Below are positions 22,071 to 46,089 of a stretch of 64,000 nucleotides of DNA, one piece after another. Made by a program: the position numbers and the translations under genes. Below the pieces are notes generated by a model that was not told where the DNA came from, searched no databases, and saw only the letters and a program-made list of their open reading frames with translations. The stretch comes from Leucoraja ocellata (Eukaryota): contig JAWMAR010000276.1 of NCBI GenBank assembly GCA_036785375.1, positions 1,054,001-1,118,000 on the forward strand, in the 5' to 3' direction. Each line of letters begins with the position of its first letter. The stretch's first letter is position 1.

Positions 22071-24899
22071 TTACGAACTTCTAAATGGTTGTACGGCAAC
22101 CTTTCTACCCTTGCAAAGCGAATGAAAACTAGTATCCAACGTGCTTGCTGGACAATTTTTCTAGTTATTCGACTTGAAGAAGGGTCCTGACCAGAGTGTG
22201 GTATTTCCATTTTCTCCAGAGATGCTGTCTGAGCCGCGGAATTACTCCAGCACTTTGTGTCACAACGTTTGCAGCCCCTTGTGTCTATAATGTATCTACT
22301 TGTGTTGTTACAGTTGGGGATCATTTCATATGCGCACTGAAGTCCGTCGTCCCTCTGTACTTGCGGAGTTCTACATTTTACCGTGTATGACCTTCCCCGT
22401 CTCTCAAAATACATCCCCTAACATGGTGAATACAGATGAGAAATGGCCAAGTCCACGCTTATGGCTACACACTTGGCTCGATTGTGCTCCACGGAAACTG
22501 CCCGAACAGTGAACTGTCTCAACGAAACCGAGTTAAGAACTTAATGCACCATTGTCGGGGCAAGGTGCAGCGTGTGATCCGAGTGCCCGGAAAAAGGCTG
22601 CCTCGACCGTTGCAGAAATTGTCTATGAGACGCATTTTATGAAATGTGGCGAATCAGGACTTTTGAAACTCGTCAGAGAAAAACAAGTGGGCGTGTGGCA
22701 TATTTGCCGTTGTGAGTGGTGATATTGCTGTTTGTTTCCTGGTTTCCTTTATTAACTTTGCACCGCGTCCCGCTGCGAAAACGCTGTAGAGATGACCGCG
22801 ATTTTTCAATATGAGGGTTTTAGTGTCCTGACAACCCAAAAGGAGAGAGGACAAATGCAACCCGAATAATTAGTGAGTGTGTTTCGGTTGACGTGGCATG
22901 AAACTGATAGTTCGCTGCAAAGATCTATAAAATCTTTGGTTCGCTATTGGTTTCATATTCACGGCTCGAACATTCAAGGTTCAAGGGCGAGGAGGGTGAG
23001 CGGTGACGGATCAAAGGGGGGGAGCGGGGCGAGGGGCAAGGGTTTGGGGAGGAAGAGTTGCGCGGGACGGGCGGCAATGGGCAGGGAGGGAAAGGGGACG
23101 GGACAGGGCAAGGGGAGGGGGAAGCGGGGACGGGGCATGCGGAGGGGGTGGTACAAGGGGAGAAGGACAGAGGGGAGGATGAGGAGCGAGTGAGGAAAGA
23201 GGGACGCGATGAAACTATATAGTAATATGCAACAGATTCCACAGACTGGTGTTTAGCGAGGCCGTGTTGTTTACCAGAACACTTTACAAACTGCGCGACC
23301 CGATGAGTTGCTCCGGACCGGAAGTTTGTGTATTTTGCTATGTAAAAACAGCATCTGCATTTCCTTGTGTCAATAACCGTGCTGCTGCCGTTGTTGGGTG
23401 ATTGTGAAATGTGACCTCTAGGTCCCTTTGTTTCTCAGTATTCGTCCTCACAAAACGTATCAACTAATATGGCGAATACAAATAAACATGTTTAATCCTC
23501 TCTTGCGACCTCGGGCTCCACACACGGTTGAGTCCTGCTCTTCCCCGCCACTTTCTATAGGCGGGGCAGCAAAATGTCTGACTGTAAACAAGTTGTTTTC
23601 TGTCCGGACACAATAAACTCTACCGCAATGAGAGCGAGTTAACGACTTAGTACAGTGTTCGGGGATTATACAGCGTGTGTGACCCAATGATCCGCACTAT
23701 GATCCGCCGACCACTGCAGACATTTGTATACGTCGCATTTTATAAAAAAGTTTGAGTGTTAGGCCGTTTGAAACTTGTCAGACAAGAAAAGCAAGAAAAG
23801 ACAAGGAACTGCAGATGCCAGAGAAAGATACACATAGTTTGGAGTAACTCAGCGGGTCGTGCAGCATTTCTGGAGAACATGGATAAACGAATCTTAAGAA
23901 GGGTCCCGAAACAAAACGTCGACCATCTATGTTCTCCAGAGAAGCTGCCTGACCCCAGCCTTTTGTTCATTTATAACACTAATAAACAGATGGAGTCGTT
24001 GAGGGTCTTTCGGCTTCGTTTCCGCACAGCCCCCTGCCGCGAATGACGGATGTGGTCGAACCGAAGACGGTACCTGGCTCCGGACAACCCAAAGGGAGAG
24101 GATAAATGCGATCCAAATACTTTGTGAGTTTGTGTTTGGATCATCTTGCTTTAACGCCGATAGTTCGCTGTTGGGTTCACCTTCGCATTCGCGCCCCGAA
24201 CATTTCAAGTTCAAGGGCGAGGAGGGTAGGCGAGGGAGGGCGGAGGGGGGTAAAGCAAGAGAGGGACGTGGACGTGAGTGGGGGGGTGGGGGAAGGGAAG
24301 TAAAGGAGATGAGCGGTGGGGGAGGGAGAGGGAAACCGGGCCGGGGCGGGGGGGGGGGGGGGTGGGGGTGAAATAAGGACTCAGGGAAGTGAAGAAGAGT
24401 CGCAATGAAATGAAACAATCTGGTCGACACAGCGATAGAGTTGCTGCCTCACAGCGCCAGAGACCCTAAAAATAAAATAGAAGGCAAAGGATCCCACCGC
24501 GGACCAGCCTGGTGTTCAGTGAGGTGTCACACAAAATGCTGGGGTTACTCAGCGGCACAGGTAGCATCTCTGGGGAGAAGGAATGGGTGACATTTGTGGT
24601 CGAGACACTTCTTCAGATTGAGAGTCAGGGGAGAGAGAGACTAGAGATATGTAGAGTAAAGTGTGAAATGCTAAATGCATTTCGTTGTCTCTGTACTGTA
24701 CACTGACAATGACAATTAAAATTGAATCTGAATCTGAAAGCAACTTCCTTGAGGCGTGTTGTTTACCAGAACCCATTTATATATATATTTCTCGGAAATG
24801 TTACGCAATTGGTTAGAGGTGGAGCTAATGGGCTGGACCAATAAGATACCAACCACCTCCTTCCCCTCCCCCCCCCCCCCCCCCCCCCCCACTCTGAGC

Positions 24900-26345
24900 C
24901 AAAGATCTTATAGCGGAGCAACATGGGTTACTCTCACGCAAACGTGTAGTACGCTCATGGGCGGATTCATGGGTGATTATGATTCATTTTAGCAACCAGC
25001 CCCCGCCATCTTGTTCCGCCCAAGATTGGATCCGCAGCGGGGAGAGGGCATAGGAGGGGGGGAGACATTGTAGTGTGGGGGCAGGCGAGGGGGGGGGGGG
25101 GTAAGGCCTAGTGTGTGTGAAGTTGCAGGGGAGGTTTACAATGTTTCTTATTTACAATATTTCTTATTTAATGTCCCTTGTCTAGTCTGAAATAAAGTTC
25201 ATTATTGAATCAGAAGAAATATAATTATGTGTGTTATATGATATATATTTATATAATTTTCATGTATGTATGTTATAAACATTTTATTCTTTAACAAGAA
25301 TTAACAGAATTATGAACTAACAGATTATGAATCTAACCCTTTCTCACACACAAAAGTCCCCCCCCTGTCAATTACCCTGCGAGTCGGGTCGGTTCCGGTT
25401 ACTACAAAATCAACTCAAACACTGCTTGTGAGCCATTTAAAAAATAAATGATTTAAAAAAAAATTCAAAAAGACAATACCAGAGTAAAATTTTATTCTTG
25501 ACAAGAAGTTTGAACTGGCAGATTTATGAATCTAAACCGACACAAAACTGTTGCCCCGCAACATTGATTACACTGCGAGTCGGGTCGGGTCAGGTAGGCT
25601 CAGGTTACTAAAATGGGCGGCGAAAAATGCCCAGGATCATCCTCCATAGCGCACTACACGTCAGCCCATTGCATTTAGCAGGAGTAGCCTATCTTGCTCC
25701 GCTATAAGATCTTTGGCCGGGAGAGGGAGTGCGCGGCCCGGGGATAGGGAGTGTGGGGCCCGGGGATAAAGCCTAGTGTGTGTGAAGTTGCGGGGAGGTT
25801 TACAATGTTTCTTATTTAATGTCCCTTGTCTAGTCTGAAATAAAGTTCATCATTGGATCAGAAGAAATATAATTGTGTGTGTTATATGATTGTATACATT
25901 TATATCACATTCATGTAGGTGTGTTTATAAACATTTTATTCTTTAACAAGAATTAACAGAATTATGAATCTAACCCTATATCACGCACAAAAACTTCCCC
26001 CGCAATGCCAATTACCCTGCGAGTCGGGTCGGTTCAGGTTACAAGAAAATCAACTCAAACACTGCTTGTGAGCCATTTAAAAAGAAATGATTTAAAATAT
26101 ATTAAAAAAGACAATTACCAGTCAAATTTTATTCTTGACAAGAAGTATGAACTGACAGAATGATGAATCTAACCCTATATCACACACACAAACTGTTAAT
26201 TGATTACACTGCGAGTCGGGTCAGGTAGGCTCCGGTTACTAAAATGGGCGGGGAAAAATGCCCAGGATCCCGTCCGTAGCGTACTACATGTCAGCCCATT
26301 GTATTTAGCAGGAGTAGCCTATCTTACTCCGCTATAAGATCTTTG
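24900..26345. mobile_element. hAT-like non-autonomous DNA transposon with duplicated right arm
   Basis: TIR CAAAGATCTTATAGCGGAG at the left end and its inverse at both ~25697-25715 and 26327-26345; 8-bp TSD CTCTGAGC/CTCTGAGT. Confidence 0.85.
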
Positions 26346-26739
26346 CTCTGAGTGGCAGTGAGCAAGTGACGGCTCTGTGTGCTTGTGTTTCAAGATCAAG
26401 TCGTTGAGACACAAGGAACTGCAGATACTGATTTACAAAAAAAGAGAAAGAGTGATCTTGCATTAATGATCTTGACACAAAGATAGATACTTGATTAGTA
26501 CGGGTGTCAAGGGTTATGGGGAGAAGGCAGGAGATTGAGGTTCAGAGGGAGAGATAGATCAGCCATGGTGGAGTAGACTTAATAGGCAGATTGGCCTAAT
26601 CACATGACCTTATGATGGAGTAATTTAGCAGATTGAGCGCATCTCTGGAGAACATGGGTTAGTCTGAAGAAGGATCCCAACCTGAAATGTCACAATTGCT
26701 GCCTGACCCACTGAGTTACTCTAATACACCAGAATTATA

Positions 26740-27995
26740 GTCATATGGTGTGCAAATGGGCCCAACCTGCCCATGTCCCAACATGTCCCATCTAGATTAG
26801 TCTAACTTGCCTGCGTTTGTTTGGCCCATATCCATCTAAACCTGTCCTATCCACATACCAGTCTAATTGCTCCTTAAACATTGCTATAATCCCTGCCTCT
26901 GCCATCTCCTCCAGCTGTTTGTTGCATACACCCAGCACCCCTTGCCTGAAAATGTTATCCCTCAGATTCCTATAAAATCTTTTCCCCTTCACCTTAAAAC
27001 TATGCCCTTTGATTTGCGATTTCCCCCACCCTGGGCTAGAAACTCTGTGTGTCCACCTGATGTATTCCTCTCATGATTTTATACACCTCTATAAGATCAC
27101 ACCTCGTCATCCTGCTCTCCAGGTAATTGAGTCCCTGACTGCTCAATCTCTCCCAACAGCTCAGATTCTCGAGTCCTGGCCACATTCTTGTAAATCTTCT
27201 CTGCACCCTTTCCAACTAAACATATTTTCTATAACACGGTGCCCAGGACTGAATGCAATCCTATAAATGTGGCCTCACTGACATCTTGTATAATGGCAAT
27301 ATGATCTCCCAGGTTCTATACTCAATTCTCTGACTGATGAAGGCCAATTTTCCAAAAGCCTTTTTGACCACATTGATGCTACTTTCAAGGAATGATGTAC
27401 CTGCACATAGATCCCTCTGCTCTACAGCAATTCACAGAGCCCGACCAGTCACCCTGTAGGTCTTACCTGTATTAAACTTTCCAAAATACAACGACTGAAT
27501 TTTTTTCTGTATTAAATTCCATCAACCATTTCTGAGCCCACCAGGCCAACATATCAAGATCCTGCTGCAATTATTGACAACCATCTTCACTATCTGCAAT
27601 ACCACCCACTTTTGTATCATCTGCAAATTTGTTAATCTTGCCATGTACACAGTGGCAGACTGGCCAGGGTGTCAGCTTGCCCGATGGCAAGTGGGCCCCT
27701 GATCAAGTGGGCCCCCTATATCAAGTGGGCCCCCTTTATTTCCTGGCAACCAATATTTTTGGACCCAGTCCGCCACTGCATGTATATACTCATGCAAATC
27801 ATTGAAATAGGTAACAAATAGTAATGTGTCCAGCACCGAACCCTGAGGCACACTACTAGTCACAGACCTCCAGTCCAAGAAGCAGCCTTCCACCATCACC
27901 CTCTGCTCCTTCCAAGAAGCTAATTTTCTATCCATTCAACTATCTCTCCATGGATCCCATGTGATTTAACCTTCCAGAGCAGCCTACCATGTGGT
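26740..27995 (-). mobile_element. CR1 LINE fragment (approximate)
   Basis: QRVMVEGCFLDWRSVTSSVPQGSVL..LLFV and a CR1 3' end. Confidence 0.8.
27650..27778. mobile_element. 129-bp hAT-type MITE nested in CR1
   Basis: TIR CAGTGGC(A/G)GACTGG; TSD CATGTACA/CATGTATA; three internal CAAGTGGGCCCC repeats. Confidence 0.85.
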
Positions 27996-28303
27996 ATTGG
28001 TTCATGCAAGTCATTGAGTATTGACATGCACTGAAGCACATGAGATCATCAGTCTTATGATCACAATCCACAGGTCAAGGGTCCAGTGTTAGCCCAGCTG
28101 TGTCAACAGCAGTGCCCTCTGACAATAAAGGTCAACCCTGTGACCCTGGAGGATGTGGACCATTTATTATTTATTTGGAGCAGTCTTCTGATGAAATTTT
28201 GCATCAACTTGGTTTGTTATCCATCGCTCCCGATGCACTGTTCCTGAAGATTTGGAGAAGATGCTCAATAAAATAACTTGTTCTATTTTTAATCTTCAAG
28301 GCA

Positions 28304-28358
28304 ATGGATTGTACGTTGAGAAAGATGCTGTTGTCATTGATGCTGTTCCCTAACTTGG
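28304..28358 (+). CDS. Exon: signal peptide
   Basis: gcaATGG Kozak context; MDCTLRKMLLSLMLFPNL; donor G|GTGAGT. An acceptor at 28300 implies an upstream non-coding exon. Confidence 0.75.
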
Positions 28359-31300
28359 GTGAGTGTTCATCTGAATGGGGAGATTGTGTACATTTGTTAT
28401 CCACTAACTGGCTGCTTCTCACAAGTTATGAATCTGATCTTAGAGGCAATTAAGTTTTCTGTTTTATTCATTGCCTAATTTAAGATTGAAGAGTAAACCC
28501 TTTGCTCAACAATATAACAAAGATTCTCACACATTTTTTCTTTCATTGCTTATTTGCCTATTGAGGTGACATTATTCTCCTGCTTTTACCTTCATTTCAA
28601 TCCTTTTTCCCTTCATTTCATTTTGTAACTAAAGTAATATCTTGTAAAGTGTGATAGAGTCAGTAGATGTGGAAACACGTCAGTGGATTGGATTTGTGGC
28701 ATGCTGGAAGCTTTAGCATACCGCAGCCAGAGAGCAGTGCTGAACTACTATCTACCTCTTTGGTGACTCTCAGACTTTCCTTGTTCGGACTTTGCTGGCT
28801 TTACCTTGCACTAAACATTATTCCCTTGTCCAGCACTGTAATACACTGTAAATAAACTGTACACTGCCTGGCTCAATTGTTATCATGTATTGTCTTTCTA
28901 TTGACTGGATAGCACGTAACAAAAGTATTTCACTGTGCCTCGGTGCATGTGTCAATAAACTAAACAACTCTGTTGGAGCACAGGAAGTTTGGAGGTAGAT
29001 GACTCCAACTTTATCTGCAAGTTAACGCATGCATTTTCATTTCCTCTATTTTCCCAGCTGAAGGATCTTTCTCTCGATCCTTTGGGATGTTGAATAGAGA
29101 CATCCTGCTGCCCTGCGCCTTCCATGCTTCATCCAACTTCAATCTGAAAAATCTCATCATCACATGGCAGCGGACAGGCAGTCTCACCGTGGTTTACAGT
29201 TTCTATTCTGGAACAATCCATCGGGAGCATCAGGACAAAGCATTCCTGGACCGCACTCAACTATTTCTCTCCGAATTCACCAAAGGGAATGCGAGCCTGA
29301 AATTGGAAAGAATGTTGTTATCTGATGTGGGAAACTATACTTGTTTTGTAACTGTAGATGATGGAATGCCACACATTGAGAACGTGGTGGAACTAAAATT
29401 AAATGGTGAGTGCATCTTGTGACAGATAGATCGATGTTTTGTTGTGTACATTTCATAGAATTGTAAAGCACAGAAAGGGAATCTTTTGGCCGTCTCATAC
29501 CAATGCTATTCTCTGCAAATCCCATTTGTCTGCATTAGACCAGTGTCTTTCCCATCCAAGTACCTTTCCAAATGTCTTTCAAACATTGTCATAGTATCAC
29601 TTTCTACTACTTCCTCTGGAAGCTCATCCCAGATATTGTCATCCTGTGTGAAAACATTCTCATCAGATCTCTTTTAAAAGTCTCTCCTCTCACCTTGAAC
29701 CTGGTCTTTGTCTCGACCCGCAATCTTATCTGTCCATTTCCCTCCGTGGATGTCGAGTTTCTCCTGCATTTTTGTATTTTGATCAAGATTCCAGCATCTG
29801 TCACAACTTGCATCCCCATTAAACCTGTGCCTTCTAGTTCTGGCTCCCTGCGGAAAAAGACTCTGACTATATCCCATTGATATCCAATTTAAACTGGTAG
29901 AGGCAGAATCCCCGGTTGTCTGGCATTCCAGTGAGTGAAAAACCAGCCTTTCCATTTTCTCATTATAATTACAGTCCACTATTCTGGGCGACATGTGCTG
30001 AATATCTTGTGAATGCTTTTACAATAACACTTCCTGTAACGTGACAACTGGAACTGCACTCAGTATTCCAAATGCAGTGTAAGCAGTGTTTAGTACAGCT
30101 CCAACATGATGTTCCAACTCTTGCAGTCATTGCCCTGGCTTATGAAAGCAAAGAGACCATCCGATTTGTGTTTTGCTATCTCTGGTGATAGGATTGCAAG
30201 TGCAAGTGAATAAGTGCCTCATCTAGGAAGTCTGTATCCCTGGACAGTGGGAAGGGAAGAGATGAAAAAGCAGGTTTTGCAACTTCTGCGATTGCATGAG
30301 AGAGTTTCCCAATCTTGGGAGCGATTGATAATACAGAAGACCGGACCAGGGCAATACATAGAATGTAAAACAGTGCAGCACAGGAACAGGATATTCGGCC
30401 TGCAAGGTCCACGCCAAACATGATGTCAGGTTAAAATAACTGCCCTCTGCCTGCACTCAAACTTTCTTCAAAATGCTGAAAAGGGAGGAGAGGAAAGTAG
30501 TCTGAAGAAGGGTCTCGACCCGAAACGTCACCCATTCATTCTCTCCAGAGATGCTGCCTGTCCTGCTGAGTTACTCCAGCATTTTGTGTCTACCTTCGAT
30601 TTAAACCAGCATCTGCAGTTCTTTCCTGCACAGAGGAAAATATATGTTTGGTGGTCAAGTCTTGTTGGAGCTGCTGGAATTGGCAAAGATGATCCATTGA
30701 ACGGAGAGACAACTGGGTCCAGGGAACTCTGTTGTGTAGGAAGGAACTGCAGTTGCTGGTTTACACCAATGATCGACACACAAAGCTGGAGCAACTCAGT
30801 GGGTCGGGCAGCATCTCTGGAGAAAAGGAATAGGTGACGTTTCAGATCGAGACTGCAATGTCAGTTTGTCGCTCGCCAATCCCTGAACTGACAACAGAGA
30901 TCCAGAAAGAGAAGGGGAGTGTCAGATGCTGTAAATTGGAAGCAAAAATGGAAGGCATTTGAGTTGTGCCTGAGTGCAGGAAGCAGCACTGATATAATCG
31001 TCGATGTACTAGAAGATGAGTTGAGGGGTGTGCCAGAGTTGCCCCAAAACAGTGATAGCTTCCTATATCCCACAAAAAGACAGGCATAGCTTAGCCCATG
31101 TGAACTGCACTGTTGATCTGGAGACTATGGTCATGGTCCATTTGTGACAGGTTTGTATCGTGTGAGCACTTGTTGCTTATAAAAAATTGTATTCAAAATA
31201 GAAGACTTACACTACTATTACACTTGCAATAAAAAAGGGTCCATCAGATTTTCACAATTCTGTTCCCAAATGCAAATTATAAAATTAATTACATTATAAT

Positions 31301-34300
31301 ATATCTTGATTTGAAAATGTGGTTTAGCTCAATTCTTAATTGAACACTAACCATTTGGTTTTTTTTGTGTTCTGAACATCGTAGATATATCGGAGAATAA
31401 TACATGCGGTGGCACCGATCCAGCTTCAGAAAGGAAAAAGGTTGTACTCATACTTCCATTGCTACTTGTCATTTTAATTGCAGTTGGAATTTTGCATTGG
31501 CAAATGAAAAACAAGGAGAAACCAGATATTGAAGAGAGTGAGTAAAATGTTTAGGATTTTGGCCATTAATCACACAAACTGAATACCTATTCGAGAATGT
31601 GTTCAGAACACTGCATTGGGAATGGATTTCTAGGCACTTTCAGCCATAGTGTATATGACATCCTTTGAGAGGAACATGTTCTAACATGTGGTTTATTCTA
31701 TTTCTTTTTAGTGATTCATTTACTGGAAGACAATATAAAAGGTAAAGAACCAACCTCCGTTGAGATTTTCTTAAGTTATGCAGACTTACCTACGTGGAGC
31801 TGGCCGGCTTCGGGGCGTGGAGAGCGGCGGTTGCACATTGATGTGACCCGGCTCCAGTGGATGGTAACACCAGGAGCTCGCGGATCCCCGGTGGGAGACT
31901 GCTTTGCGGGGCACCGGCAGCGGCGACTTCTCCAGCCCGAATTGCGGGGTTGAGAGTGACCTGGAGGGGGGCCCTACAACGCCCGGCGCGGCCTTAATTT
32001 GCCGCGGACTAGCGCCCGCTGGGGGCTTTGACCTCGACTTCGGGAGGGAAATGGAGTGCAGGGGAGAGACAAGAACTTTGCCTTCCATCATAGTGAGGAG
32101 GAGAGCCACTGTGATGGATGTTTATGTGAATAGTGTTGGTGTGTGTTTTGGTTCTTTTATTGTATTGTATGGCTGCAGAAACTACATTTCGTTTGAACCT
32201 CATGTGAGGTTCAAATGACAAATAAAGGTATTGTATATTGTATATAGTTTCTGCCCACAATAGTAGAAGTGGTCTCCTTGTCCACTACTGGAATCTGCCA
32301 TGGAATTAATCTTCAGAAGGGTGTGAAATAATTGTTTTTAGAATGTGGTCGTTGAATGAATAAAATAATTAAATATGAATTTTGAAAGAAAGAACATACA
32401 AAATATATATAAAATCCAGACCTGTTTGAGCAAAGTATCTTAACAAGAAATTAATTTTATTCTTTTCAGGAAGCCCATCCAGTCTCACAGCTCATTCAGC
32501 AGCTTGACCTTTTAAGCCACATCAGGCTAGAATGGCAGATAACTGAAATTATTGATGCAGATGGAATTTGACGGCAGTCTTGTCACTTCCTCATCACCTT
32601 TACTGAGATTGTTTGAATCTTCAATTCCACAGCTGCTGTGGTGGGATTTAGGCTGATGTCACTTGATCAATGGTCCAAGCCTGTAGATATTAATCACTAT
32701 GCCAGCATACTCCACTGCTTGCCCTACTCCTCTCTGTACAGCCTCATAGTGAACCTTGACACCATTGGTTCAATCAGTGTCCCTCACCCCTTGGTCTGGT
32801 GTAATCATACAGTGACCAACGTAGAGTCCCACCAGTATGTCCTGAATGGTACCGTAGTGTTGGGTGCAAGGATAGTCCCTTGTTTCTCACTCCGTTTTGC
32901 TGCCCTCCAAATCATGGATCCATTCTACAATGGAGTTGCATGCTGGAAGATTATAATCTAGCCATTGAGTATTATTTGGCAGGAGGACCGTCATTCTGCA
33001 TCATCTCCAAGCACCCAGGAATCCAAGGTTCACCTTCAAACTGTATCAGATTTTATTATGTGAAATATTTTCATAATATGGATATTTTGAACTGTGTAAC
33101 AAAGTGCCAACCAAAAGCTGGTGTAGATGATGAATGGAAAATCTGCAAGATTTTAATACCTGTGTCAGCAGGGCATACTGACCAACAGTTGGCAAATGGA
33201 ATAGTATAGGTGGTTACTTGATGTTTGGCATGGACAAGGTGGGCTGAAGGGGCTGTTTCTGTGCTGCATAACTCTGACAACTTAAACCTGAAGCGATGTG
33301 GGAATTCTTAAAGGGGATCAGCAATTTAATGGATATCTGATGCTCACAGTTCTCACATTTTGTTAATCCATGATAATAAAATACTTGCTCGTTCTGAGAA
33401 ATGTGTTTTTTTTTCTTTTCTTCAGATGCCATTCTGAATTATAAAGAGTACATCTTGAAAGATAAAATGCATTTATGTTGTTCATTAACACAACGGCGAT
33501 TCGAAAACTATCCGCTTGCCAGAACCATCAATATTACCAACCCGAAGGAACAAGACCTAGATGGTGATCTTATCAGGAGCGATGACTCAAATATTGCACA
33601 AGAAGTACAAATTTCACAACTGCTGTCATTGCTTCGGGAAGAAAACTTCTCAAAGCGAGTCCTGCTGGTAGGTGATGCAGGAGTAGGGAAGAGTTGGACT
33701 GTTGTCAGCATGGAGCAAGAGTGGGCATCTCAACCAACCCATCCCTTGAGGTGCGTCTTTGTTCTCAGATTCCGTGACTTGAATGAGGTTAAAGGAAAGA
33801 CATCTCTCCGGGATCTGCTGAAGAAGCATTGCACACCTTTGTCATCAGTCCTAACAGAACTCCTCTCGAACCCTCAAGATGTGTTGATCATTTTGGACGG
33901 GCTGGATGAATTCGCCCATCAGTTGCAATGGAATCCATCAGGTTGTGATTTCGACCTGGATAGTGAGGCTGAAGTAGGTGTTCTTGTTTCCAAACTAATA
34001 TTCAAGAACCTCCTTCGAGAAGCCCAGGTGTTGGTTACCTCCCGGTGGAATACCAAGCAGATAGAATTTAACAAGAAGTACTTTGATCAGCTTTTTGTTA
34101 TCTCTGGCTTTACCAATGATCAGCTGAAAAGATATTGTGAGGTGTTTTGTGGAGAGAAGCAAAAGGCGGAAGTAATGTTTCAACGCATTACAGAGAATGC
34201 AACCATCAAATGTCTGGCTTCCAATCCCCTCAACAGCTTCATTCTGTGCAATATTTTGGACAAGTGTACCAGCTCTCAAGCAAATGTACCAGTGACAAAT

Positions 34301-37300
34301 AGCAAAGTGTTTACATTGTTGCTGTACAGTCTGTTTAACTGCAGCACGAGTAAAGAAACAGACGCTGAGAATAAGAGTGAAGAGGAGAAGCAATTGTTTA
34401 AAGACACCATCCTGAAACTGGGAGAACTATCCTTCAACTCTCTGCTATCAGGGAAACTTAAAATAAATGTGACTGATCTGAAGACCTATGGAATAGATCC
34501 AGACATCCTTTCAAAATATCTCTCAAATCTTGTGCTGGACTGTAAATGCCAAGGAGTCTTTGAGTTCCACCATGCAGTGCTGAAGGAACAATTTGCAGCT
34601 TTGTATTGTGCTACTTTACTCAACAATGAAGCTGAAGAGTTGGTCAAGTGTCTGGATCTGTGGTGCTTTGGGAAAATGCCACTAAATCAAATGAGCCAAT
34701 TTTATTTGCAATCTTTTCAACCTGACCACACAGAGAAACTGTACAATTTTCTGAGGTTTCTCACTGGCTTCTTAACCGCAGGAAGAGATGGCAAGTTGTG
34801 GAACTATACAACTCCTCTCCCCCCTTCTACAGCCAGAGCTCTCACAACATGGTTCAAAAACAGCCTTCAGCGAGACATTAAGAAGGCAGAATTGCTGAAT
34901 TTGATGCACTGTCTCTTTGAACTGAATGATGCCACTGTAACGGCAGAAGTATCTCCTTGCATCCGAGATGTGGGTTTTCACAACGTTTCTCTGAGCCCAC
35001 TCGATCTGCGTGCTTTGTGCTACTGTCTCAATCATTCCACCGTGGAGGAGATGGATTTGAGGCACTGTAGCATTGGTGATAAAGGAATAAAGCAGCTCCA
35101 AGAAATACTAGTCAAGTGCAGAACTCTTTTGTGAGTAATGATTTTCAAAAGAATATTAAGCTCCAGTTGCACTAATCTACCTTCTTGCATGCACAATGTT
35201 TGTTGACATGTTTTATACTTTTGTCACATTTTATGCCCTACATGTCCTGATTTATTCTAGCCCAGCTAATATTTGTGCCTGAAAGTTGTAATGAAATATA
35301 TACAAATGGAGATACTACTCTTCAAGACTAGAATGGAAACAATGTGTGCAATTATCTCCCTCAACTACATTGTTCTATGGTAACCCCACCCTCCTCCAAT
35401 GTTGCCCTGTGGAGCCACAGAGCTTCATTGTAATAACCACAAGGGCAGAGATTTAATTCTATGCATTCATTCTAGTTGTTGCTCTTATGAATACACATGC
35501 ATTGATCACTATAAAAATACTTGGGGGCGGTTTGCTTTATCTGCAAATACACCTGTTGGGGGTTTGATCTTTCTGTAAATCTTGGCCCACCCCATTTCCA
35601 ACGCAGCAGTGTCAATGGACAGGTATTCATAAATCTAGAGGAACAGCATCTCCTATCTCACCTGGGTGGTCTACAACCTAATGGTATGAACATCAAATTC
35701 ATGTAACCCCTCTGTCTATTTGTTGTCTCCTGATACACCTAGATTATCTGTATGTCACTGTATGTCATGTTGTTACTTGTGGGTGGAGCACCTAGGCTAA
35801 TTCCTTGTATGTGAATACTTGGCCAATAAACTTACTAACTTACTTACTTGTCTCATATGCCCCTTCTTTTCAAACCCAACCCCTCTTTCAGTTTCTGTAA
35901 TCACCCTACCCCATCCCAAATGATTCCATCTGTGTATCACTTGCACATTACACCCACTTGATTTCCCAATTCCCTCCACTGTTCCCCTTTTGCCCACTAT
36001 CCCACCCTAATGTGGTTCCACTCACCATTATCCTTTCTTATCAGATTCTATAATCTACCCATGTACCCATGTACCCATTATCACCTCCTCAGCTTCAGGT
36101 TCATCTCAGCATTCCTCATCTGGGCCCACCTATTACTTAAGGACACAAAGTGCTGGGGCAACTCAGCGGGTCAGGCATCATCTTTGGAGAACACGGATCA
36201 CTGACGTTTCAGTTCGGGACCCCACTACAGACTGATCATTAGTTTGAAGAAGAATCCTGATATGAAACATAATCTATTACGTTCTCCAGAGATGCTGCCT
36301 GACCTGCTGAGTTACTACAGCATTTTGTGTTCTTTTGTGTAAATCGGCATCTACAGTTCCTTGTTTCCTCTTTTACTGTACCACTCTACTGCTTTTTTTT
36401 AAATTGCTGCTTTTTTCCCTTTTTCCTTCCGCCCACAATATCTAAAAGAATATGTGATTCTGTTCCATTCTGTTTGTAGTTTGTTTGTTTGTTTGTCTTT
36501 TTGCACAAAGTCCGCGAGCATTGCCACTTTTCATTTCACTGCACATCTCGAAAGTGTATGTGACAAATAAACTTGACTTGACTTGACTTGACTTTATGCT
36601 CTAAATCCTCGACCGCAAACATCGACTGTCTGTCTGCCGCCACCGATGCTGCTTAACCCGCTGAGTTCCTCCACTAGTTCGTTTTTGCTCCAGATTCCTG
36701 CGTTTGCTGTCTCTTGTATATCCAAATATCCAAACATTGATTATTATCAACAAGGTTGAATTGATTTTGTGTATTAGAAAGTGCTCAAGCAGAAACAAAG
36801 GATCTCTTAAACTATGTAATTACCTTAAGTCATTTTAAGCCCCATTTGCACTATCGTTCAAAAATCATTGCCCAGACACATGTGTTAGACCAAGGTTAGA
36901 CTCTGCTCTCCCAGCAGTGCCACAATTGTTTATTTTGCAGCTACCTTTGCAGGCAGCAGTTTGTGAGGATTGTGTTCTGTCCCCAGGCACTCGGGTCTCT
37001 AATTGTTTTCAACGTCTTGTGTTTCCAGGGTAAGCTCCAACAAACTGACTGTAAAGTCAGCAAAGAGTTTGAATGCCGTCCTTGAAGACCCAAAGTGCAG
37101 GATTGAGACATTATCGTGAGATTTTTCATCACATAAATCCTCTTGTAAAATTCTCCAAGTTTCTATAGAGCTTCCAATCGCTGACATTTGCCATTTGGTT
37201 CCGTTTTCAGGTGTGGTACAAACTCTTTTGGTTCGGCGGGGGCTCAGATTCTGTGGAAAGCTCTGGCACGAAACAGAAGTCTCAAAATCCTTCGCCTGTA

Positions 37301-38772
37301 TGACAATGGGATCACAGTTGAAGGCACAGAGAACATGACTCAGTACCTGACATGCAACAAAACTCTCCAGAAACTCTTGTAAGTAGCTGGTAGATGTGAG
37401 AACATAAGCAGTATATTTGATAAATGCTCACACGGATTGGTTTGTGTGCAATTATGTTGGCGTTGGTGAGTTTGAGATGTGTTATGTAAATGTGAACATG
37501 TAGAAACAAGGTGCGGCAGATGCTAGTTTACCCGGGAAAGACACAAAAAGCTGGAGTTATGCAGCGGGTCGGGCAGCATTCCTGGAGAACATGGAAAAGT
37601 AACGTTTTGGGACAAGACCCTTTGCTCAGACTGATTAGTCTGAAGAAGTGCCCCGACCTGCAGGTTTGATGAATCTGATTGATCAGTTTGATCTGATTGA
37701 TCAATTCAGACTGATTAAACTGAAGAAGGGTCCCGACTAGTAATATTATATATCCATGTTCTCCAGGGATGCTGACTGACCAGCTGAGTTACTCCAACAT
37801 TTTGTGTCTTTCCTTGTATAAATGTGGCTTTTTTTTTCTTTCCCAGTCTCCATGGGACCCTCTACCACACAAGGAACACTGCTGTTCCAGGCATGACCGT
37901 ATGTTTTTGTTTCAGTGTGAAGGAGCGGCAGGAAAGGAGCAATGATTGAGACAGCATTCTAACTCAAGACTGTGGCTGAATCACCATTAGCAATTGCACT
38001 AAGATTAGCTGGCAAAGATTACGCCTTTCGGAAGGAACTGGGCACATTCTTAATTGAGTAATAAATAAAAGAAACGAGTTGTGGAAATAGTTTAGATCAG
38101 TAAAAGGAAATTAGGATATAAGGGAACTTGTGTTCAAATTTTCAAATAGGAATAATAATATTTGAAGAAGAAACATTTGCATGGATTAGAGAAAGAGTAG
38201 AAAGAGTGAGCAAGTACAAAGTTCCCTATATGTCTGCACAGTCATGATGCTGAATGGCCACTTCCTCATTGTAGAATTTGATGATTATTAAGATACCGTG
38301 AATGAGATGGTTGGAATTTAATTTTCTAATTCCTGATTTAAATACGATTGAAGCATTCACTAATTTTCATTGCCTTGTTGCTTTCAGTTTATGTGTAAAC
38401 AAACTTGATGACCTTGAACAGAAAAACATTCAACAAGTCGAAAAGCTGTGTCACGGGCTAAAGATCGTCACTAAAATCAGAGACGATGAAGAGCTCTTAC
38501 TCCGAGTTGAAAGTCAGGTTCAAATGCTTCCCTCCCTTGAGCAGAGTTACGGCACAGAGTGGCTGTGCAAACTATTGAAATCCATTCTGAAAGACTTGGG
38601 AGATGAGAGTACCATACCTGATGTAGACACCCGGGTAAGGATAGGAAAGATAAAAGCAAATATTAACAAATATCTTCAGAAGAACAAAGTCACCATGATT
38701 GATGTTCCAGACACGGAGAATGTGTTGCAGCTCCATACCCCTGCACCACTTCTTCTGAAACAACTTCCTTAA
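28304..38772 (+). CDS. Predicted type I membrane protein: signal peptide, B7-like IgV, TM, NACHT, LRR and helical tail (976 aa)
   Basis: Exons 28304-28358, 29058-29405, 31385-31537, 31712-31741, 33426-35130, 37029-37115, 37211-37378 and 38388-38772. All GT-AG, phases 1,1,1,1,2,2,2; 2931 nt with no internal stop. Confidence 0.72.
29058..29405 (+). CDS. Exon: B7/butyrophilin-family IgV domain (CD276/VTCN1/HHLA2-like)
   Basis: DILLPCAF..LIITWQ..VVYSFYSG..QDKAFLDRTQLF..EFTKGNASLKL..SDVGNYTCFV is the typical B7-family V pattern. Confidence 0.92.
30502..30530 (+). ncRNA. Minimal hammerhead ribozyme motif of the Penelope-type repeat (representative copy)
   Basis: CTGAAGA-AGGGTC-TC-GACCC-GAAAC-GTCA; similar copies at 7071, 18577, 41685 and 56302 (+) and 47126-47154 (-). 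Confidence 0.7.
31385..31537 (+). CDS. Exon: stalk and transmembrane helix
   Basis: DISENNTCGGTDPASERKK-VVLILPLLLVILIAVGIL-HWQMKNKEKPDIEE; donor A|GTGAGT. Confidence 0.85.
33426..35130 (+). CDS. Exon: NACHT NTPase, helical/winged-helix domains and first LRRs (NLRC3/NLRP-like)
   Basis: Walker A GDAGVGKS (33671-33694), Walker B LIILDGLDE, sensor-1 VLVTSR, WHD FEFHHAVLKEQFAA, LLNLMHCLFEL, and LRR MDLRHCSIGDKGIKQL. Lies within a 577-aa open frame. Confidence 0.95.
37029..37378 (+). CDS. Two ribonuclease-inhibitor-type LRR exons (37029-37115, 87 nt; 37211-37378, 168 nt)
   Basis: Phase 2-2 exons of 29 aa and 2x28 aa: SSNKLTVKSAKSL..KCRIETL and NSFGSAGAQILWKALARNRSLKILRLYDNGI. Confidence 0.88.
38388..38772 (+). 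CDS. Terminal exon of the NLR: last LRR plus ~100-aa C-terminal extension
   Basis: Acceptor ttgctttcag, phase 2; LCVNKLDDLEQKNI... to TAA at 38770-38772. Confidence 0.8.
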
Positions 38773-38868
38773 TCGTTTCTTTTCTACGTCACGGTGGTGC
38801 AGCGGTAGAGTTGTTGCCTTACAGCGAATGTATCGCCAGAGACTCGGGTTTGAACCCGACTACGGGTT

Positions 38869-40526
38869 ACATAGACATAGAAACATAGAAATTAGATGCA
38901 GGAGTAGGCCATTCAGCCCTTCGAGCCTGCACCGCCATTCAATATGATCATGGCTGATCATCCAACTCAGTATCCCTTACCTGCCTTCTCTCCATACCCT
39001 CTGATCCCCTTAGCCACAAGGGCCACATCTAACTCCCTCTTAAATATAGCCAATGAACTGGCCTCGACTACCCTCTGTGGCAGAGAGTTCCAGAGATTCA
39101 CCGCTCTCTGTGTGAAAAAAGTTCTTCGCATCTCGGTTTTAAAGGATTTCCCCCTTATCCTTAAGCTGTGACCCCTTGTCCTGGACTTCCCCAACATCGG
39201 GAACAATCTTCCTGCATCTAGCCTGTCCAACCCCTTAAGAATTTTGTAAGTTTCTATAAGATCCCCTCTCAATCTCCTAAATTCTAGAGAGTATAAACCA
39301 AGTCTATCCAGTCTTTCTTCCTAAGACAGTCCTGACATCCCAGGAATCAGTCTGGTGAACCTTCTCTGCACTCCCTCTATGGCAATAATGTCCTTCCTCA
39401 GATTTGGAGACCAAAACTGTACGCAATACTCCAGGTGTGGTCTCACCAAGACCCTGTACAACTGCAGTAGAACCTCCCTGCTCCTATACTCAAATCCTTT
39501 TGCTATGAAAGCTAACATGCCATTCACTTTCTTCACTGCCTGCTGCACCTGCATGCCTACTTTCAATGACTGGTGTACCATGACACCCAAGTCTCGCTGC
39601 ATCTCCCCTTTTCCTAATCGGCCACCATTTAGATGAAAGATTATTACTAATGCATCCACTATTTCTGGAGCTACTTCCTTAAGTACTCTGGGATGCAGCC
39701 TATCTGGCCCTGGGGATTTATCGGCCTTTAATCCATTCAATTTACCCAACACTGCTTCCCGAATAACCTGGATTTCCGGCAGATTATTTATGTCTTCCTT
39801 AGTGAAGACGGAACCAAAGTAGTTATTCAATTGGTCCGCCATATCCTTGTTCCCCATGATCAACTCACCTGTTTTGACTGCAAGGGACCTACATTTGTTT
39901 TAACTAATCTCTTTCTTTTCACATATCTATAAAAACTTTTGCAGTCAGTTCCCTGCCAGTTTTCTTTCATAATCTATTTTTCCTTTCCTAATTAATCCCT
40001 TTGTCCTCCTCTGCTGGTCTCTGAATTTCTCCCAGTCCTCTGGTATGCTGCTTTTTCTGGCTAATTTGTACGCATCATCCTTCGCTTTGATACTATCCCT
40101 GATTTCCCTTGTTATCCACGGATGCACTACCTTACCTGATTTATTCTTTTGCCAAACTGGGATGAACATTTTTTGTAGTTCATCCATGCAGTCTTTAAAT
40201 GTCTTCCATTGCATATCCACCTTCAACCCTTTTAGAATTAATTGCCAGTCAATCTTGGCCAATTCATGTCTCATACCATCAAAGTTACCTTTCTTTAAGT
40301 TCAGAACCATTGTTTCTGAATTAACAATGTCACTCTCCATCCTAATGAAGAACATAACCATATTATGGTCACTCTTGCCTAAGGGGGCACGTACAACAAG
40401 CCTGCTAACTAACCCTTCCTCATTACTCAATGCCCAGTCTAAAATAGCCTGCTCTCTCGTTGGTTCCTCTACAGGTTGATTAGATAACTATCCCGCATAC
40501 ATTCCAAGAAATCCTGTCTATCCTGA
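38869..40526 (-). mobile_element. CR1 LINE (internally deleted) inserted into a tRNA-SINE
   Basis: Minus ORFs ..KSPGPD..HPRVLKE.., VRPHLEYCVQFWSP and RGDLIETYKI. The SINE halves at 38790-38868 and ~40527-40660 are contiguous when the LINE is removed. Confidence 0.88.
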
Positions 40527-45899: not shown

Positions 45900-46089
45900 C
45901 AGCTGATCGAGGGGAGGTTGGTGAGATGACACCGCCTCTGGTGAGTCACCAGGGAGCGGCCACAGCCCGCCCTATAGACGAGGCGCAGCGTGAGCCGGGC
46001 GGAGCTTCCCCTAACGCGGACAAGGCCAATGCAAAGATCCTATAGCGAGCTCCCAGGAAGCGCGGAGTGAAAGCTTACACTCGGTGAGT
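45900..46089 (+). promoter_or_regulatory. CpG-rich promoter and putative non-coding first exon of the legumain-prodomain gene
   Basis: CpG-rich patch with GGGCGG, CCAAT (~46026), GGAAG and a consensus donor TCG|GTGAGT at 46083/46084. Confidence 0.55.

What the first reader, a model, noticed from the sequence alone, without database searches (positions are those of the whole stretch)
28304..38772. Candidate cell-surface NLR: B7-family IgV ectodomain and TM spliced in frame to NACHT-LRR
Seen in the sequence: the leader, B7-type IgV, TM and a 30-nt linker exon (MIHLLEDNIK) all end in phase 1. The NACHT exon starts at a strong phase-1 acceptor (long pyrimidine tract, CAG at 33425), giving G|AT = Asp and one 976-aa frame. 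I found no PYD, CARD or BIR exon and no CpG promoter between 31742 and 33425 that could give the NLR its own start. Established: typical vertebrate NLRs are soluble cytosolic sensors with N-terminal death-fold or BIR effector domains, and B7 ligands mostly have short tails. Inference: phase-1 exon shuffling replaced the effector domain with a B7 ectodomain and TM, so extracellular engagement could drive NACHT oligomerisation, or cytosolic sensing could cluster a co-signalling ligand. I do not know of a description of this architecture but could not search the literature.
Basis: partly seen in the sequence, partly recalled or inferred. Interest (0 to 1): 0.95.

Follow-up and report, generated by a model that had tools for sequence, protein, structure and literature searches.

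The report
Membrane-anchored NLR with B7-like ectodomain
A skate gene, shared with sharks, chimaeras, coelacanth and amphibians, makes an innate immune sensor of the normally cytosolic NLR type that is instead anchored in a membrane behind an antibody-like B7 domain, an arrangement I could not find described for any vertebrate.

Summary
Transcript contigs from two studies join leader, B7-type IgV, TM, 30-nt linker and NACHT exons at GT..AG borders, including 31741^33426. Raw oligo-dT RNA reads of a third study show the same joints, but only one read for the key one.

Corrections:
- The true start codon lies in an upstream exon (24106-24123) inside a CpG-rich region. The ATG at 28304 is internal.
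- The linker-NACHT intron holds an alternative terminal exon (from 32470). It gives a 214-aa NLR-less B7 isoform seen in 8 transcript contigs.

The architecture is not a skate oddity. V-set + TM + NACHT-LRR proteins occur in rays, sharks, Callorhinchus and amphibians. Coelacanth has NACHT-LRR models plus one chimeric model carrying the IgV-TM. They form one NACHT clade (SH-aLRT 100). RefSeq names them "NLRC3-like" or "NLRP1 homolog".

Ten full-text searches found no vertebrate description. The nearest precedents are sea-cucumber AjNLRC4 (Ig+TM+NACHT) and sponge TM-NLRs.

Topology (type I, NACHT cytosolic) and mechanism are inferred. I favour NACHT oligomerisation clustering the B7 domain ("inside-out", about 0.4). 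The scan flagged a second copy about 298 kb beyond this window (s1-884578).

The parts
22500..24500 (.). CpG-rich region around the first exon; candidate promoter
   Evidence: GC 0.46-0.57 and CpG o/e 0.88-1.12 in 500-nt windows, against 0.12-0.3 further downstream. Promoter function is inferred, not tested.
24106..24123 (+). Coding part of exon 1: start codon plus five codons (MRSKYF), followed by a GT donor
   Evidence: The only match to this peptide upstream of the gene in the window's + strand frames. All skate transcripts and RefSeq models begin with it. The X1 contig extends 136 nt 5' of the IgV exon, but only 57 nt of that lie at exon 2.
28301..28358 (+).
   Evidence: AG acceptor at 28299-28300 and GT donor at 28359. 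Joint 28358^29058 is seen in X1 and X3 contigs and in 3 raw reads of X24.
29058..29405 (+). IgV exon (348 nt, phase 1 to 1), B7-H3/B7-H4-like
   Evidence: Pfam V-set 5e-7. PDB best matches: CD276 and VTCN1. Covered by contigs of X1, X3 and X7.
31385..31537 (+). Stalk + transmembrane helix + basic juxtamembrane stretch (153 nt, phase 1 to 1)
   Evidence: Sequence. Hydropathy peak. Joint 29405^31385 in 3 runs' contigs and 1 raw read.
31712..31741 (+). 30-nt linker exon; together with the end of the TM exon it encodes the conserved [DE]xxxL[LI] motif
   Evidence: Joints 31537^31712 and 31741^33426 in X1 and X3 contigs; 2 and 1 raw reads of X24. Motif count.
32470..32507 (+). Coding part of an alternative terminal exon (12 codons + stop) giving a 214-aa NLR-less IgV-TM isoform. 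The 3' UTR probably runs to about 33400, where an AATAAA lies near 33376
   Evidence: P0174 and 4 cluster mates (8 Logan contigs of 1.1-1.7 kb) end with exactly this peptide. Acceptor read. X24 depth of 1-4 over 32490-33289 is compatible but ambiguous. The UTR end is inferred.
33426..35130 (+). Large exon: pre-NACHT helix, NACHT NBD, HD1, WH, HD2 and first LRR; starts in phase 1, ends in phase 2
   Evidence: Pfam NACHT 7e-26, NOD2_WH, NLRC4_HD2. PDB NLRP3/NOD2. X1 contig with 0 other letters on 33424-34289.
37029..37115 (+). LRR exon (87 nt, phase 2 to 2)
   Evidence: Borders. 100% tblastn match to P0001 residues 771-799.
37211..37378 (+). LRR exon (168 nt, phase 2 to 2)
   Evidence: Borders. 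Weak LRR_6. tblastn to P0001.
38388..38772 (+). Last exon: last LRR and a conserved helical C-terminal tail; stop at 38770-38772
   Evidence: tblastn to P0001 residues 856-982, 95%. The tail is conserved as far as amphibians and modelled as helices 889-956 at high pLDDT. No Pfam family.

Best explanation
Shown:
- This is one expressed gene, about 14.7 kb from start codon to stop (24106-38772).
- Its long mRNA encodes, in order: a signal peptide, a single B7-H3/B7-H4-like IgV domain, a short stalk, one transmembrane helix, a lysine-rich juxtamembrane stretch with a conserved acidic di-leucine motif, a conserved helix, and then a complete NACHT-WH-HD2 switch with about seven LRRs and a helical tail.
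- No CARD, PYD or BIR is present.
- It belongs to an old jawed-vertebrate family (cartilaginous fishes, coelacanth, amphibians).
- A second mRNA ends in the intron before the NACHT exon and encodes only the IgV-TM part.

Inferred:
- The protein is type I, with the IgV outside the cell or in the lumen of an endosome, and the NACHT-LRR in the cytosol (about 0.9).
- In NLRs the N-terminal module is what oligomerisation brings together. Here that module is the TM helix with the B7 domain.
- I therefore favour an inside-out mode (about 0.4). A cytosolic cue relieves LRR autoinhibition. Nucleotide exchange then drives NACHT oligomerisation. That clusters the B7 domain into a multivalent ligand read by a receptor on another cell. 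This would resemble the way butyrophilins report a cytosolic signal through a B7-like ectodomain.
- The short isoform would act as a constitutive or competing form of the same ligand.
For: - Splicing: all four joints are in X1 and X3 contigs and in raw RNA reads.
- Domains.
- Type I topology: a hydrophobic 19-mer lies between the IgV and the Walker A motif in 30 of 35 models, and 3-6 K/R fall within the 15 residues after it in those 30 models. The AF2 model has a helix at 164-182.
- Intact switch: Walker A G/K/S, the Walker B aspartates and R408 are invariant or nearly so across 17 sequences. The model's cytosolic part matches ADP-bound NOD2 (Foldseek E 2.9e-29).
- One family: the 34 Ig/TM NLRs form one clade (SH-aLRT 100) split into cartilaginous-fish and coelacanth+amphibian halves.
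- The NLR-borne IgVs cluster together (27-row clade, support 83).
- The IgV is as conserved as the NBD between skate and amphibians (32-41% against 25-40%), so the ectodomain is under constraint.
- The sister clade has a CARD-like N-terminus, so the IgV-TM stands where an effector stood.
- The short isoform is seen in 8 contigs.
Against: - There is no localisation, topology or binding experiment. Signal peptide and TM rest on hydropathy and on an AF2 helix of low confidence (pLDDT about 50-61).
- The direction of signalling is not addressed by any result here.
- The conserved [DE]xxxL[LI] motif (24 of 30 models with a TM; no shuffled control was run) fits an internalising receptor at least as well.
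- The published echinoderm analogue works outside-in.
- The key joint has only 1 raw read, at about 5% sampling. X1, X3 and X7 are 'RNA?' by guess only.
- Five of 35 models lack a TM, and several lack the IgV (isoforms or poor models).
- Amblyraja, and the second gene in a species whose name was cut to 'Pristi...' (P0337), have Ser in place of the first Ig cysteine.
- No counter-receptor is known.
Confidence: 0.4

Rival explanations
1. Outside-in receptor. The IgV binds a microbial or host ligand at the surface or inside a phagosome. Clustering then nucleates NACHT oligomerisation on the cytosolic face. This recruits partners (cytoskeleton, adaptors) through the NACHT, LRR or tail and drives uptake or signalling.
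For: - Sea-cucumber AjNLRC4 (Ig + TM + NACHT) is reported as a membrane receptor. Its Ig domain binds microbes and its intracellular part binds actin to drive phagocytosis (PMC8699970 abstract; PMC13133943 passages).
- A conserved acidic di-leucine motif lies 8-14 residues after the TM in 24 of 30 models. By established knowledge this motif type is an AP-adaptor endocytic/lysosomal sorting signal.
Against: - No death-fold or other known output domain is present.
- The closed, LRR-capped NACHT is not expected to open by proximity alone.
- The IgV is of the B7 co-signalling type, not a known microbe-binding type.
- AjNLRC4 has two TM segments and no LRR, so it is probably an independent invention.
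Confidence: 0.3
2. Anchor only. The IgV-TM part merely places a regulatory, effector-less NLR (like NLRC3 or NLRX1) on a particular membrane. The ectodomain serves folding, trafficking or homophilic contact, and no signal crosses the membrane.
For: - There is no effector domain.
- RefSeq names the members NLRC3-like.
- A sorting motif is present.
- IgV-less but TM-bearing isoforms exist: P0010 and P0014.
Against: - The IgV is as conserved as the NBD over the skate-amphibian distance.
- The IgV is kept as a stand-alone protein in the short isoform, and apparently in alligator, turtle and lungfish relatives. This argues for a binding function of its own.
Confidence: 0.15
3. TM bundle as effector. 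NACHT oligomerisation brings 5-10 TM helices together into a membrane-perturbing pore, as N-terminal helices do in plant CC-NLR resistosomes (recalled knowledge).
For: Only the logic that the N-terminal module of an NLR is its output, together with the lack of any other effector.
Against: - The TM segment is the least conserved part (9-50% identity).
- It has no conserved polar face that I could see.
- This reading leaves the conserved IgV unexplained.
Confidence: 0.07
4. Two separate genes (a short B7 gene and an NLR gene). On this reading the long form is read-through, a chimeric assembly or an annotation fusion.
For: - A B7-only mRNA does exist.
- RefSeq of Ascaphus lists the IgV part as short 'CD276 antigen homolog' isoforms.
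- One Latimeria model is plainly a chimera of two neighbouring genes (P0295).
- Only 1 raw read spans 31741^33426.
Against: - The same four in-frame GT..AG joints appear in contigs of two studies and in raw reads of a third.
- No other first exon for the NACHT was seen among the listed joints.
- The layout recurs in about 30 models from two vertebrate classes, with congruent NACHT and IgV trees.
- The TM and linker are conserved next to the NACHT even in IgV-less isoforms.
Confidence: 0.03

Closest known systems
Vertebrate NLRs of the NOD2 / NLRP3 / NLRC3 type
   Same: - NACHT with Walker A and B, winged helix, HD2 and C-terminal ribonuclease-inhibitor-type LRRs.
- The model superposes on ADP-bound NOD2 and on NLRP3.
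   Different: - No CARD, PYD or BIR. The N-terminus is a signal peptide, an IgV domain and a TM helix, so the protein should be membrane-inserted rather than soluble.
- Only about seven LRRs, followed by a helical tail with no Pfam family.
B7 family ligands, especially CD276 (B7-H3) and VTCN1 (B7-H4)
   Same: IgV sequence similarity, including the GNASL-type motif and the Y-x-C strand (alignment); a signal peptide; a phase-1 exon layout; a single TM.
   Different: - No IgC domain. Transcripts splice IgV directly to the TM exon.
- The cytoplasmic part is about 800 residues of NACHT-LRR instead of a short tail.
Butyrophilins (BTN3A1/BTN2A1; recalled knowledge, not tested here)
   Same: - A B7-like ectodomain, a TM, short phase-1 cytoplasmic exons, then an intracellular sensor domain.
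- This serves as a model for inside-out signalling.
- BTN3A IgV domains are weaker PDB matches of this IgV (E about 1e-6).
   Different: - The intracellular sensor is B30.2, not NACHT-LRR.
- Butyrophilins keep an IgC domain.
AjNLRC4 of the sea cucumber Apostichopus japonicus (PMC8699970, abstract read; PMC13133943, passages read)
   Same: An extracellular Ig domain, a membrane anchor and an intracellular NACHT. It is experimentally a membrane receptor.
   Different: - Described with two TM segments and without LRRs.
- It is from an echinoderm, and its Ig is not stated to be B7-like.
- Homology to this family was not tested, because no sequence was in hand. It is probably convergent.
Transmembrane NLRs of sponges (PMC12909245, passage read; it cites Amphimedon)
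   Same: NACHT proteins with predicted TM segments, taken as putative membrane-bound NLRs.
   Different: They are invertebrate, have no Ig ectodomain in the passage read, and rest on prediction only.

Membership tests
NLR (NACHT-LRR STAND ATPases) | NACHT domain with Walker A and Walker B | tested here: met
   Pfam NACHT 7e-26 on the exon. The G-K-S and D-G-L-D residues are invariant in 17 sequences.
NLR (NACHT-LRR STAND ATPases) | Winged helix / HD2 after the NBD and C-terminal LRRs | tested here: met
   NOD2_WH and NLRC4_HD2. LRR strands at 716-882 in the model. Foldseek to NOD2/NLRP3.
NLR (NACHT-LRR STAND ATPases) | N-terminal death-fold or BIR effector, as in named vertebrate subfamilies (NLRC, NLRP, NAIP) | tested here: not met
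   No CARD, PYD or BIR at E up to 1 in any exon, or at E up to 0.01 in 7 full-length relatives. It is therefore not an NLRC3, NLRP1, NLRP5, NLRP6 or NOD1 orthologue, despite the RefSeq names.
NLR (NACHT-LRR STAND ATPases) | Soluble cytosolic protein | tested here: not met
   Leader plus TM segment in 30 of 35 models. This rests on prediction only.
B7 family | B7-type IgV domain | tested here: met
   Best PDB matches are CD276 (two domains, about 5e-13 each) and VTCN1 (3e-14).
B7 family | Membrane-proximal IgC domain | tested here: not met
   Transcripts join 29405 directly to 31385. No second Ig match in the relatives, apart from a duplicated IgV in Pleurodeles.
B7 family | Binds a CD28-family or other counter-receptor | not testable with these tools
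   No binding data. A CTLA-4-like IgV gene lies upstream in the window, which is only a lead.
Butyrophilin | Cytoplasmic B30.2/SPRY domain | tested here: not met
   No SPRY/B30.2.
Echinoderm Ig-TM-NACHT receptors (AjNLRC4) | Sequence homology and common origin | not tested
   No AjNLRC4 sequence was available from a tool. The comparison rests on the papers' descriptions.
Type I membrane protein | Cleavable signal peptide, one TM, positive-inside | tested here: inconclusive
   Hydropathy and K/R counts and an AF2 helix agree. SignalP and DeepTMHMM were not on hand, and no experiment exists.

The most novel reading that the evidence does not exclude
Jawed vertebrates ancestrally had a class of NLRs that signal across a membrane. 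A cytosolic NACHT-LRR sensor has, as its output, the clustered display of a B7-family ligand to lymphocytes. This would be a direct, single-polypeptide link between innate cytosolic sensing and co-signalling. It is kept in cartilaginous fishes, coelacanth and amphibians, and reduced to a B7-only remnant in some reptiles. The neighbouring CTLA-4-like receptor gene is a candidate partner.
Probability: 0.25. Interest if true: 0.92.

Novelty: new variant of a known kind. Interest (0 to 1): 0.8.

Why it matters
- Textbook vertebrate NLRs are soluble cytosolic sensors with death-fold effectors. Here a conserved family, traceable to before the split of cartilaginous and bony vertebrates, replaces the effector with a B7 ectodomain and a membrane anchor.
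- If the protein is what the sequence says, it gives a natural test case for whether NACHT oligomerisation can be coupled across a membrane.
- It offers a new partner-hunting handle for the B7-H3/B7-H4 branch, whose receptors are, to my recollection, still unsettled in mammals.
- It parallels butyrophilins, which pair a B7 ectodomain with an intracellular sensor.
- It shows that automatic names ('NLRC3-like', 'NLRP1 homolog', 'CD276 homolog') hide a distinct family.
- Tractable amphibians (Pleurodeles, Ambystoma) carry members, so function can be tested.

Tried and rejected
- **Bacterial-type promoter/terminator scan around exon 1.** It found nothing and is not meaningful for a vertebrate. CpG statistics were used instead.
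- **Diversifying selection on the ectodomain.** The transcript variants listed are denser in the IgV/TM exons. X3 has 6 in 348 nt and 2 in 154 nt there, against 1 in about 894 nt of NACHT. Of the 13 coded, 7 are non-synonymous and 6 synonymous, and a second gene copy exists. I therefore draw no conclusion.
- **Exon structure of orthologous loci.** So I could not check whether the phase-1 junctions are conserved in other species. The evidence there is gene models only.
- **Absence from teleosts, birds and mammals.** None turned up. These searches are capped (8000 candidates, best 150 shown), so I do not claim absence.
- **A named family in print.** Ten searches gave no vertebrate Ig-TM-NLR.
- **The whale-shark genome paper (PMC8455134).** I saw 12 of 31 passages. 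[quoted passage not shown] Its figures and Supplementary file 12 were not visible, so an overlap cannot be excluded.
- **Other papers read as passages only.** PMC4852459, PMC12909245, PMC13133943, PMC2858798, PMC4016189 and PMC12436146. For PMC8699970 I read the abstract and outline.
- **Alternative exon in raw reads.** X24 coverage of 32490-33289 is as deep as the exons. However, it shows many differing letters and a different mate-strand balance. I treat it as compatible, not as proof. The proof is the protein cluster.

Full report
**What is in the sequence.** I read 28200-33600 and 35000-39000 and fixed the exon borders with a script. On the + strand these exons follow one another:
- 28301-28358: hydrophobic leader, ending in phase 1.
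- 29058-29405: 348 nt, phase 1 to 1.
- 31385-31537: 153 nt, phase 1 to 1.
- 31712-31741: 30 nt, phase 1 to 1.
- 33426-35130: 1705 nt, phase 1 to 2.
- 37029-37115, 37211-37378 and 38388-38772 (stop at 38770).

Each exon was scanned on its own:
- The second is a V-set domain (E 5e-7).
- The third has a hydrophobic stretch followed by lysines.
- The large one has NACHT (7e-26), NOD2_WH and NLRC4_HD2.
- The small 3' exons give weak LRR_6 matches, and the last exon matches no family.
- No CARD, PYD or BIR appeared at E up to 1.

Against solved structures, the IgV is closest to CD276/B7-H3 (both of its IgV domains, about 5e-13 each) and VTCN1/B7-H4 (3e-14). Butyrophilins, MOG, PD-L1 and CD47 come far behind. 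The NACHT exon is closest to NLRP3, NOD2 and NLRP5. Full-length analyses used database proteins.

**Is it really spliced together?** The NACHT exon is held by 20 public runs from 7 studies. Fourteen of them are small contig sets that look like transcriptomes but are labelled RNA only by guess. I laid four runs on 28290-34289.
- One 3042-nt contig of X1 (depth 13.8) contains IgV, TM, linker and NACHT with 0 other letters on the listed pieces.
- That contig carries the joints 28358^29058, 29405^31385, 31537^31712 and 31741^33426, all GT..AG.
- A 723-nt contig of X3, from a different study, carries the same four joints.
- X7 shows only IgV^TM, and its contigs do not reach the other joints.
- X24 is recorded as oligo-dT RNA-seq and was read at about 5 in 100. 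It gave 3, 1, 2 and 1 raw reads on the four joints.

The weak points are that the key joint has a single raw read, and that 61 further joints were not displayed.

The window encodes the first six at 24106-24123, followed directly by a GT donor. An AG acceptor sits at 28299-28300. The X1 contig also has about 79 nt upstream of exon 2 that do not lie next to it. The start exon sits in a CpG-rich stretch (22500-24500, CpG o/e 0.88-1.12), whereas the DNA around 28304 is CpG-poor (0.15). I could not lay reads on this junction, so it is inferred.

Second, the intron before the NACHT exon is not empty. 31700-32199 is CpG-rich (o/e 0.82), but it is covered by separate repeat-like contigs.

Third, at 32470 a good acceptor opens a 12-codon terminal exon.
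- A protein cluster of five sequences from eight Logan transcript contigs (1.1-1.7 kb) ends with exactly that peptide after the linker exon.
- The four complete members have 214 residues, and the fifth is a 145-residue fragment.
- Two of the five carry the window's own TM-exon sequence.
- The locus thus makes both a B7-only membrane protein and the B7-NLR. This agrees with the scan note s1-885592.

**The family.**

Cartilaginous fishes (query: the NACHT exon alone):
- A 982-aa Logan transcript protein matched at 100% local identity (99.8% over the whole exon by tblastn), with V-set, NACHT and HD2.
- Twelve further top hits were 57-85% identical, from rays and sharks: Rhinoraja, Pristis, Narcine, Mobula, Hemitrygon, Hypanus, Heterodontus, Mustelus, Scyliorhinus, Stegostoma, Chiloscyllium and P0010, whose species name was cut to 'Pristi...'.
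- Of the 13 top hits, 11 are flagged V-set. One more (Rhinoraja) has the IgV by eye.
- The remaining one (P0010) is an IgV-less isoform of a gene whose other isoform, P0337, has it.
- Its cluster mates are RefSeq 'protein NLRC3-like' of Leucoraja erinacea and Amblyraja radiata, the latter at two loci.
- The window is nearest to Leucoraja (98.9% in the NACHT exon), so it is a skate.
- A profile of 17 members added Callorhinchus, Pristiophorus and Scyliorhinus torazame.

Bony vertebrates:
- The next-best hits, at about 35%, were a caecilian protein and coelacanth fragments.
- The caecilian protein has a TM helix, lysines and the same linker ahead of its NACHT.
- Searching with it brought V-set + NACHT proteins from eight amphibians: Ascaphus, Lissotriton, Mantella, Gastrophryne, Pleurodeles, Bufo, Leptodactylus and Engystomops.
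- It also brought Pyxicephalus, which has the IgV by eye, salamander fragments and the shark Heptranchias.

Trees and conservation:
- In a quick maximum-likelihood tree of the NACHT-to-HD2 region (50 rows), the 34 Ig/TM proteins form one clade (SH-aLRT 100). It splits into cartilaginous fishes and coelacanth + amphibians.
- Its sister (support 97) is a teleost/Xenopus group whose N-termini give sub-threshold, nearly full-length CARD matches in 2 of the 3 tested.
- An IgV-only tree (56 rows) puts the 23 NLR-borne IgVs into one 27-row clade with moderate support (83).
- The other four rows of that clade are short IgV-only proteins. They come from alligator ('CD276 antigen-like'), snapping turtle, African lungfish and Ascaphus.
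- Between skate and amphibians the IgV is 32-41% identical, the NBD 25-40%, the helical domains 21-32% and the stalk + TM 9-21%.

One ancient fusion, kept under constraint on both sides of the membrane, is the simplest reading. I found no teleost, bird or mammal member, but the searches are capped, so I do not claim loss.

**What the protein looks like.**
- In 30 of 35 models a 19-residue hydrophobic peak lies between the IgV and the Walker A motif.
- In those 30 models it is followed by 3-6 Lys/Arg within 15 residues.
- With the N-terminal leader, this predicts a type I protein: IgV outside or in a lumen, NACHT-LRR in the cytosol.
- Eight to fourteen residues after the TM, 24 of the 30 have [DE]xxxL[LI]. 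That includes 18 of the 20 cartilaginous-fish rows.
- By established knowledge this is the acidic di-leucine class of AP-adaptor sorting signals. I ran no shuffled control, so its weight rests on positional conservation.
- An AlphaFold2 model of P0001, built with the 17-sequence alignment, has mean pLDDT 75.7.
- It shows a confident IgV (30-140), a low-confidence helix at 164-182, and a confident helix at 196-218 (the conserved stretch encoded at the linker/NACHT exon junction).
- It also shows a closed NACHT, about seven LRR strands (716-882) and a helical tail (889-956).
- Foldseek puts ADP-bound NOD2 first (E 2.9e-29), followed by NLRP9, NLRP14 and NLRP3.
- Walker A, the Walker B aspartates and the sensor arginine are invariant or nearly so, so the nucleotide switch looks working.
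- Oddities: Amblyraja and P0337 have Ser for the first Ig cysteine. One Stegostoma isoform skips the TM exon.

**How it may work.** The architecture is shown; the rest is inference. In NLRs, oligomerisation of the NACHT brings the N-terminal modules together. Here that module is the TM helix with a B7 domain.
- **Inside-out reporter (about 0.4).** A cytosolic cue opens the LRR-capped NACHT. The oligomer clusters the B7 domain, and another cell reads it. Butyrophilins work in a comparable way (recalled).
- **Outside-in receptor (about 0.3).** This is the mode reported for sea-cucumber AjNLRC4, and the di-leucine motif fits it well.
- **A mere membrane anchor for a regulatory NLR (0.15).**
- **A TM-bundle pore (0.07).**
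- **Two separate genes (0.03).**

The short isoform and the reptile and lungfish IgV-only relatives suggest that the ectodomain binds something in its own right.

**Known or new.** The proteins sit in RefSeq under misleading automatic names. Ten full-text searches found no description of an Ig-TM-NLR in a vertebrate.
- The whale-shark genome paper does not mention it in the passages I saw.
- Precedents exist outside vertebrates: AjNLRC4 (PMC8699970, abstract; PMC13133943, passages) and predicted TM-NLRs of sponges (PMC12909245, passage).

I therefore rate it a new variant of a known kind and of high interest. Subscription-only literature was not searchable.

**Other scan notes.** s1-884578 reports the same architecture about 298 kb beyond this window in the same genome. 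That fits the two Amblyraja loci and the allele-like differences between transcripts. I could not read that DNA.

Noticed in passing
window 5047-5463 (+), within 3571-15611: An IgV exon whose best solved relatives are CTLA-4 chains (E about 4e-5 to 6e-4), with CD28 further down. A CD28/CTLA-4-like receptor gene thus lies about 10-20 kb upstream of the B7-like NLR on the same strand. This could be a linked receptor-ligand pair. Scan note s1-884831 covers it.
   Followed up: partly
window 30490-30890: A repeat with enormous summed depth in all four runs (up to about 37,000 in contig word depth; about 500 raw reads per bin). It shows many inverted joints and loose ends. It is probably an abundant, transcribed SINE-like element inside the IgV-TM intron.
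   Followed up: no
window 31790-32215: A CpG-rich element of about 0.4 kb (GC 0.53, CpG o/e 0.82) in the linker-NACHT intron. It is covered by separate contigs, mostly on the minus strand, at depths 9-70, with a 5-nt deletion variant. Its nature is unknown.
   Followed up: no
window 28340; 29089-29338; 31441-31450: Transcript contigs differ from the window more densely in the leader, IgV and TM exons than in the NACHT exon. 7 of 13 coded variants are non-synonymous. This could be alleles or the second gene copy, and is not resolved.
   Followed up: partly
proteins P0324-P0329 (Amblyraja radiata) and P0337: The first canonical Ig cysteine is replaced by serine in all Amblyraja models and in P0337, the IgV-bearing isoform of a second gene in a species whose name was cut to 'Pristi...'. 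The IgV of these copies would lack the usual disulfide.
   Followed up: no
proteins P0268, P0334, P0335 (Alligator), P0265 (Chelydra), P0280 (Protopterus): Short IgV-only membrane proteins fall inside the clade of NLR-borne IgVs. They may be remnants or short isoforms of the same gene in lineages where no NLR-bearing form was found.
   Followed up: partly
window 38780-38850, just after the stop codon: A tRNA-like/SINE-looking sequence starts within about 10 nt of the stop. The X1 contig ends about 29 nt after the stop by my arithmetic, so the true 3' UTR and poly(A) site of the long mRNA are not defined.
   Followed up: no
window 45900-50384: Scan note s1-884892 reports a stand-alone legumain-prodomain gene downstream. 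I did not examine it.
   Followed up: no
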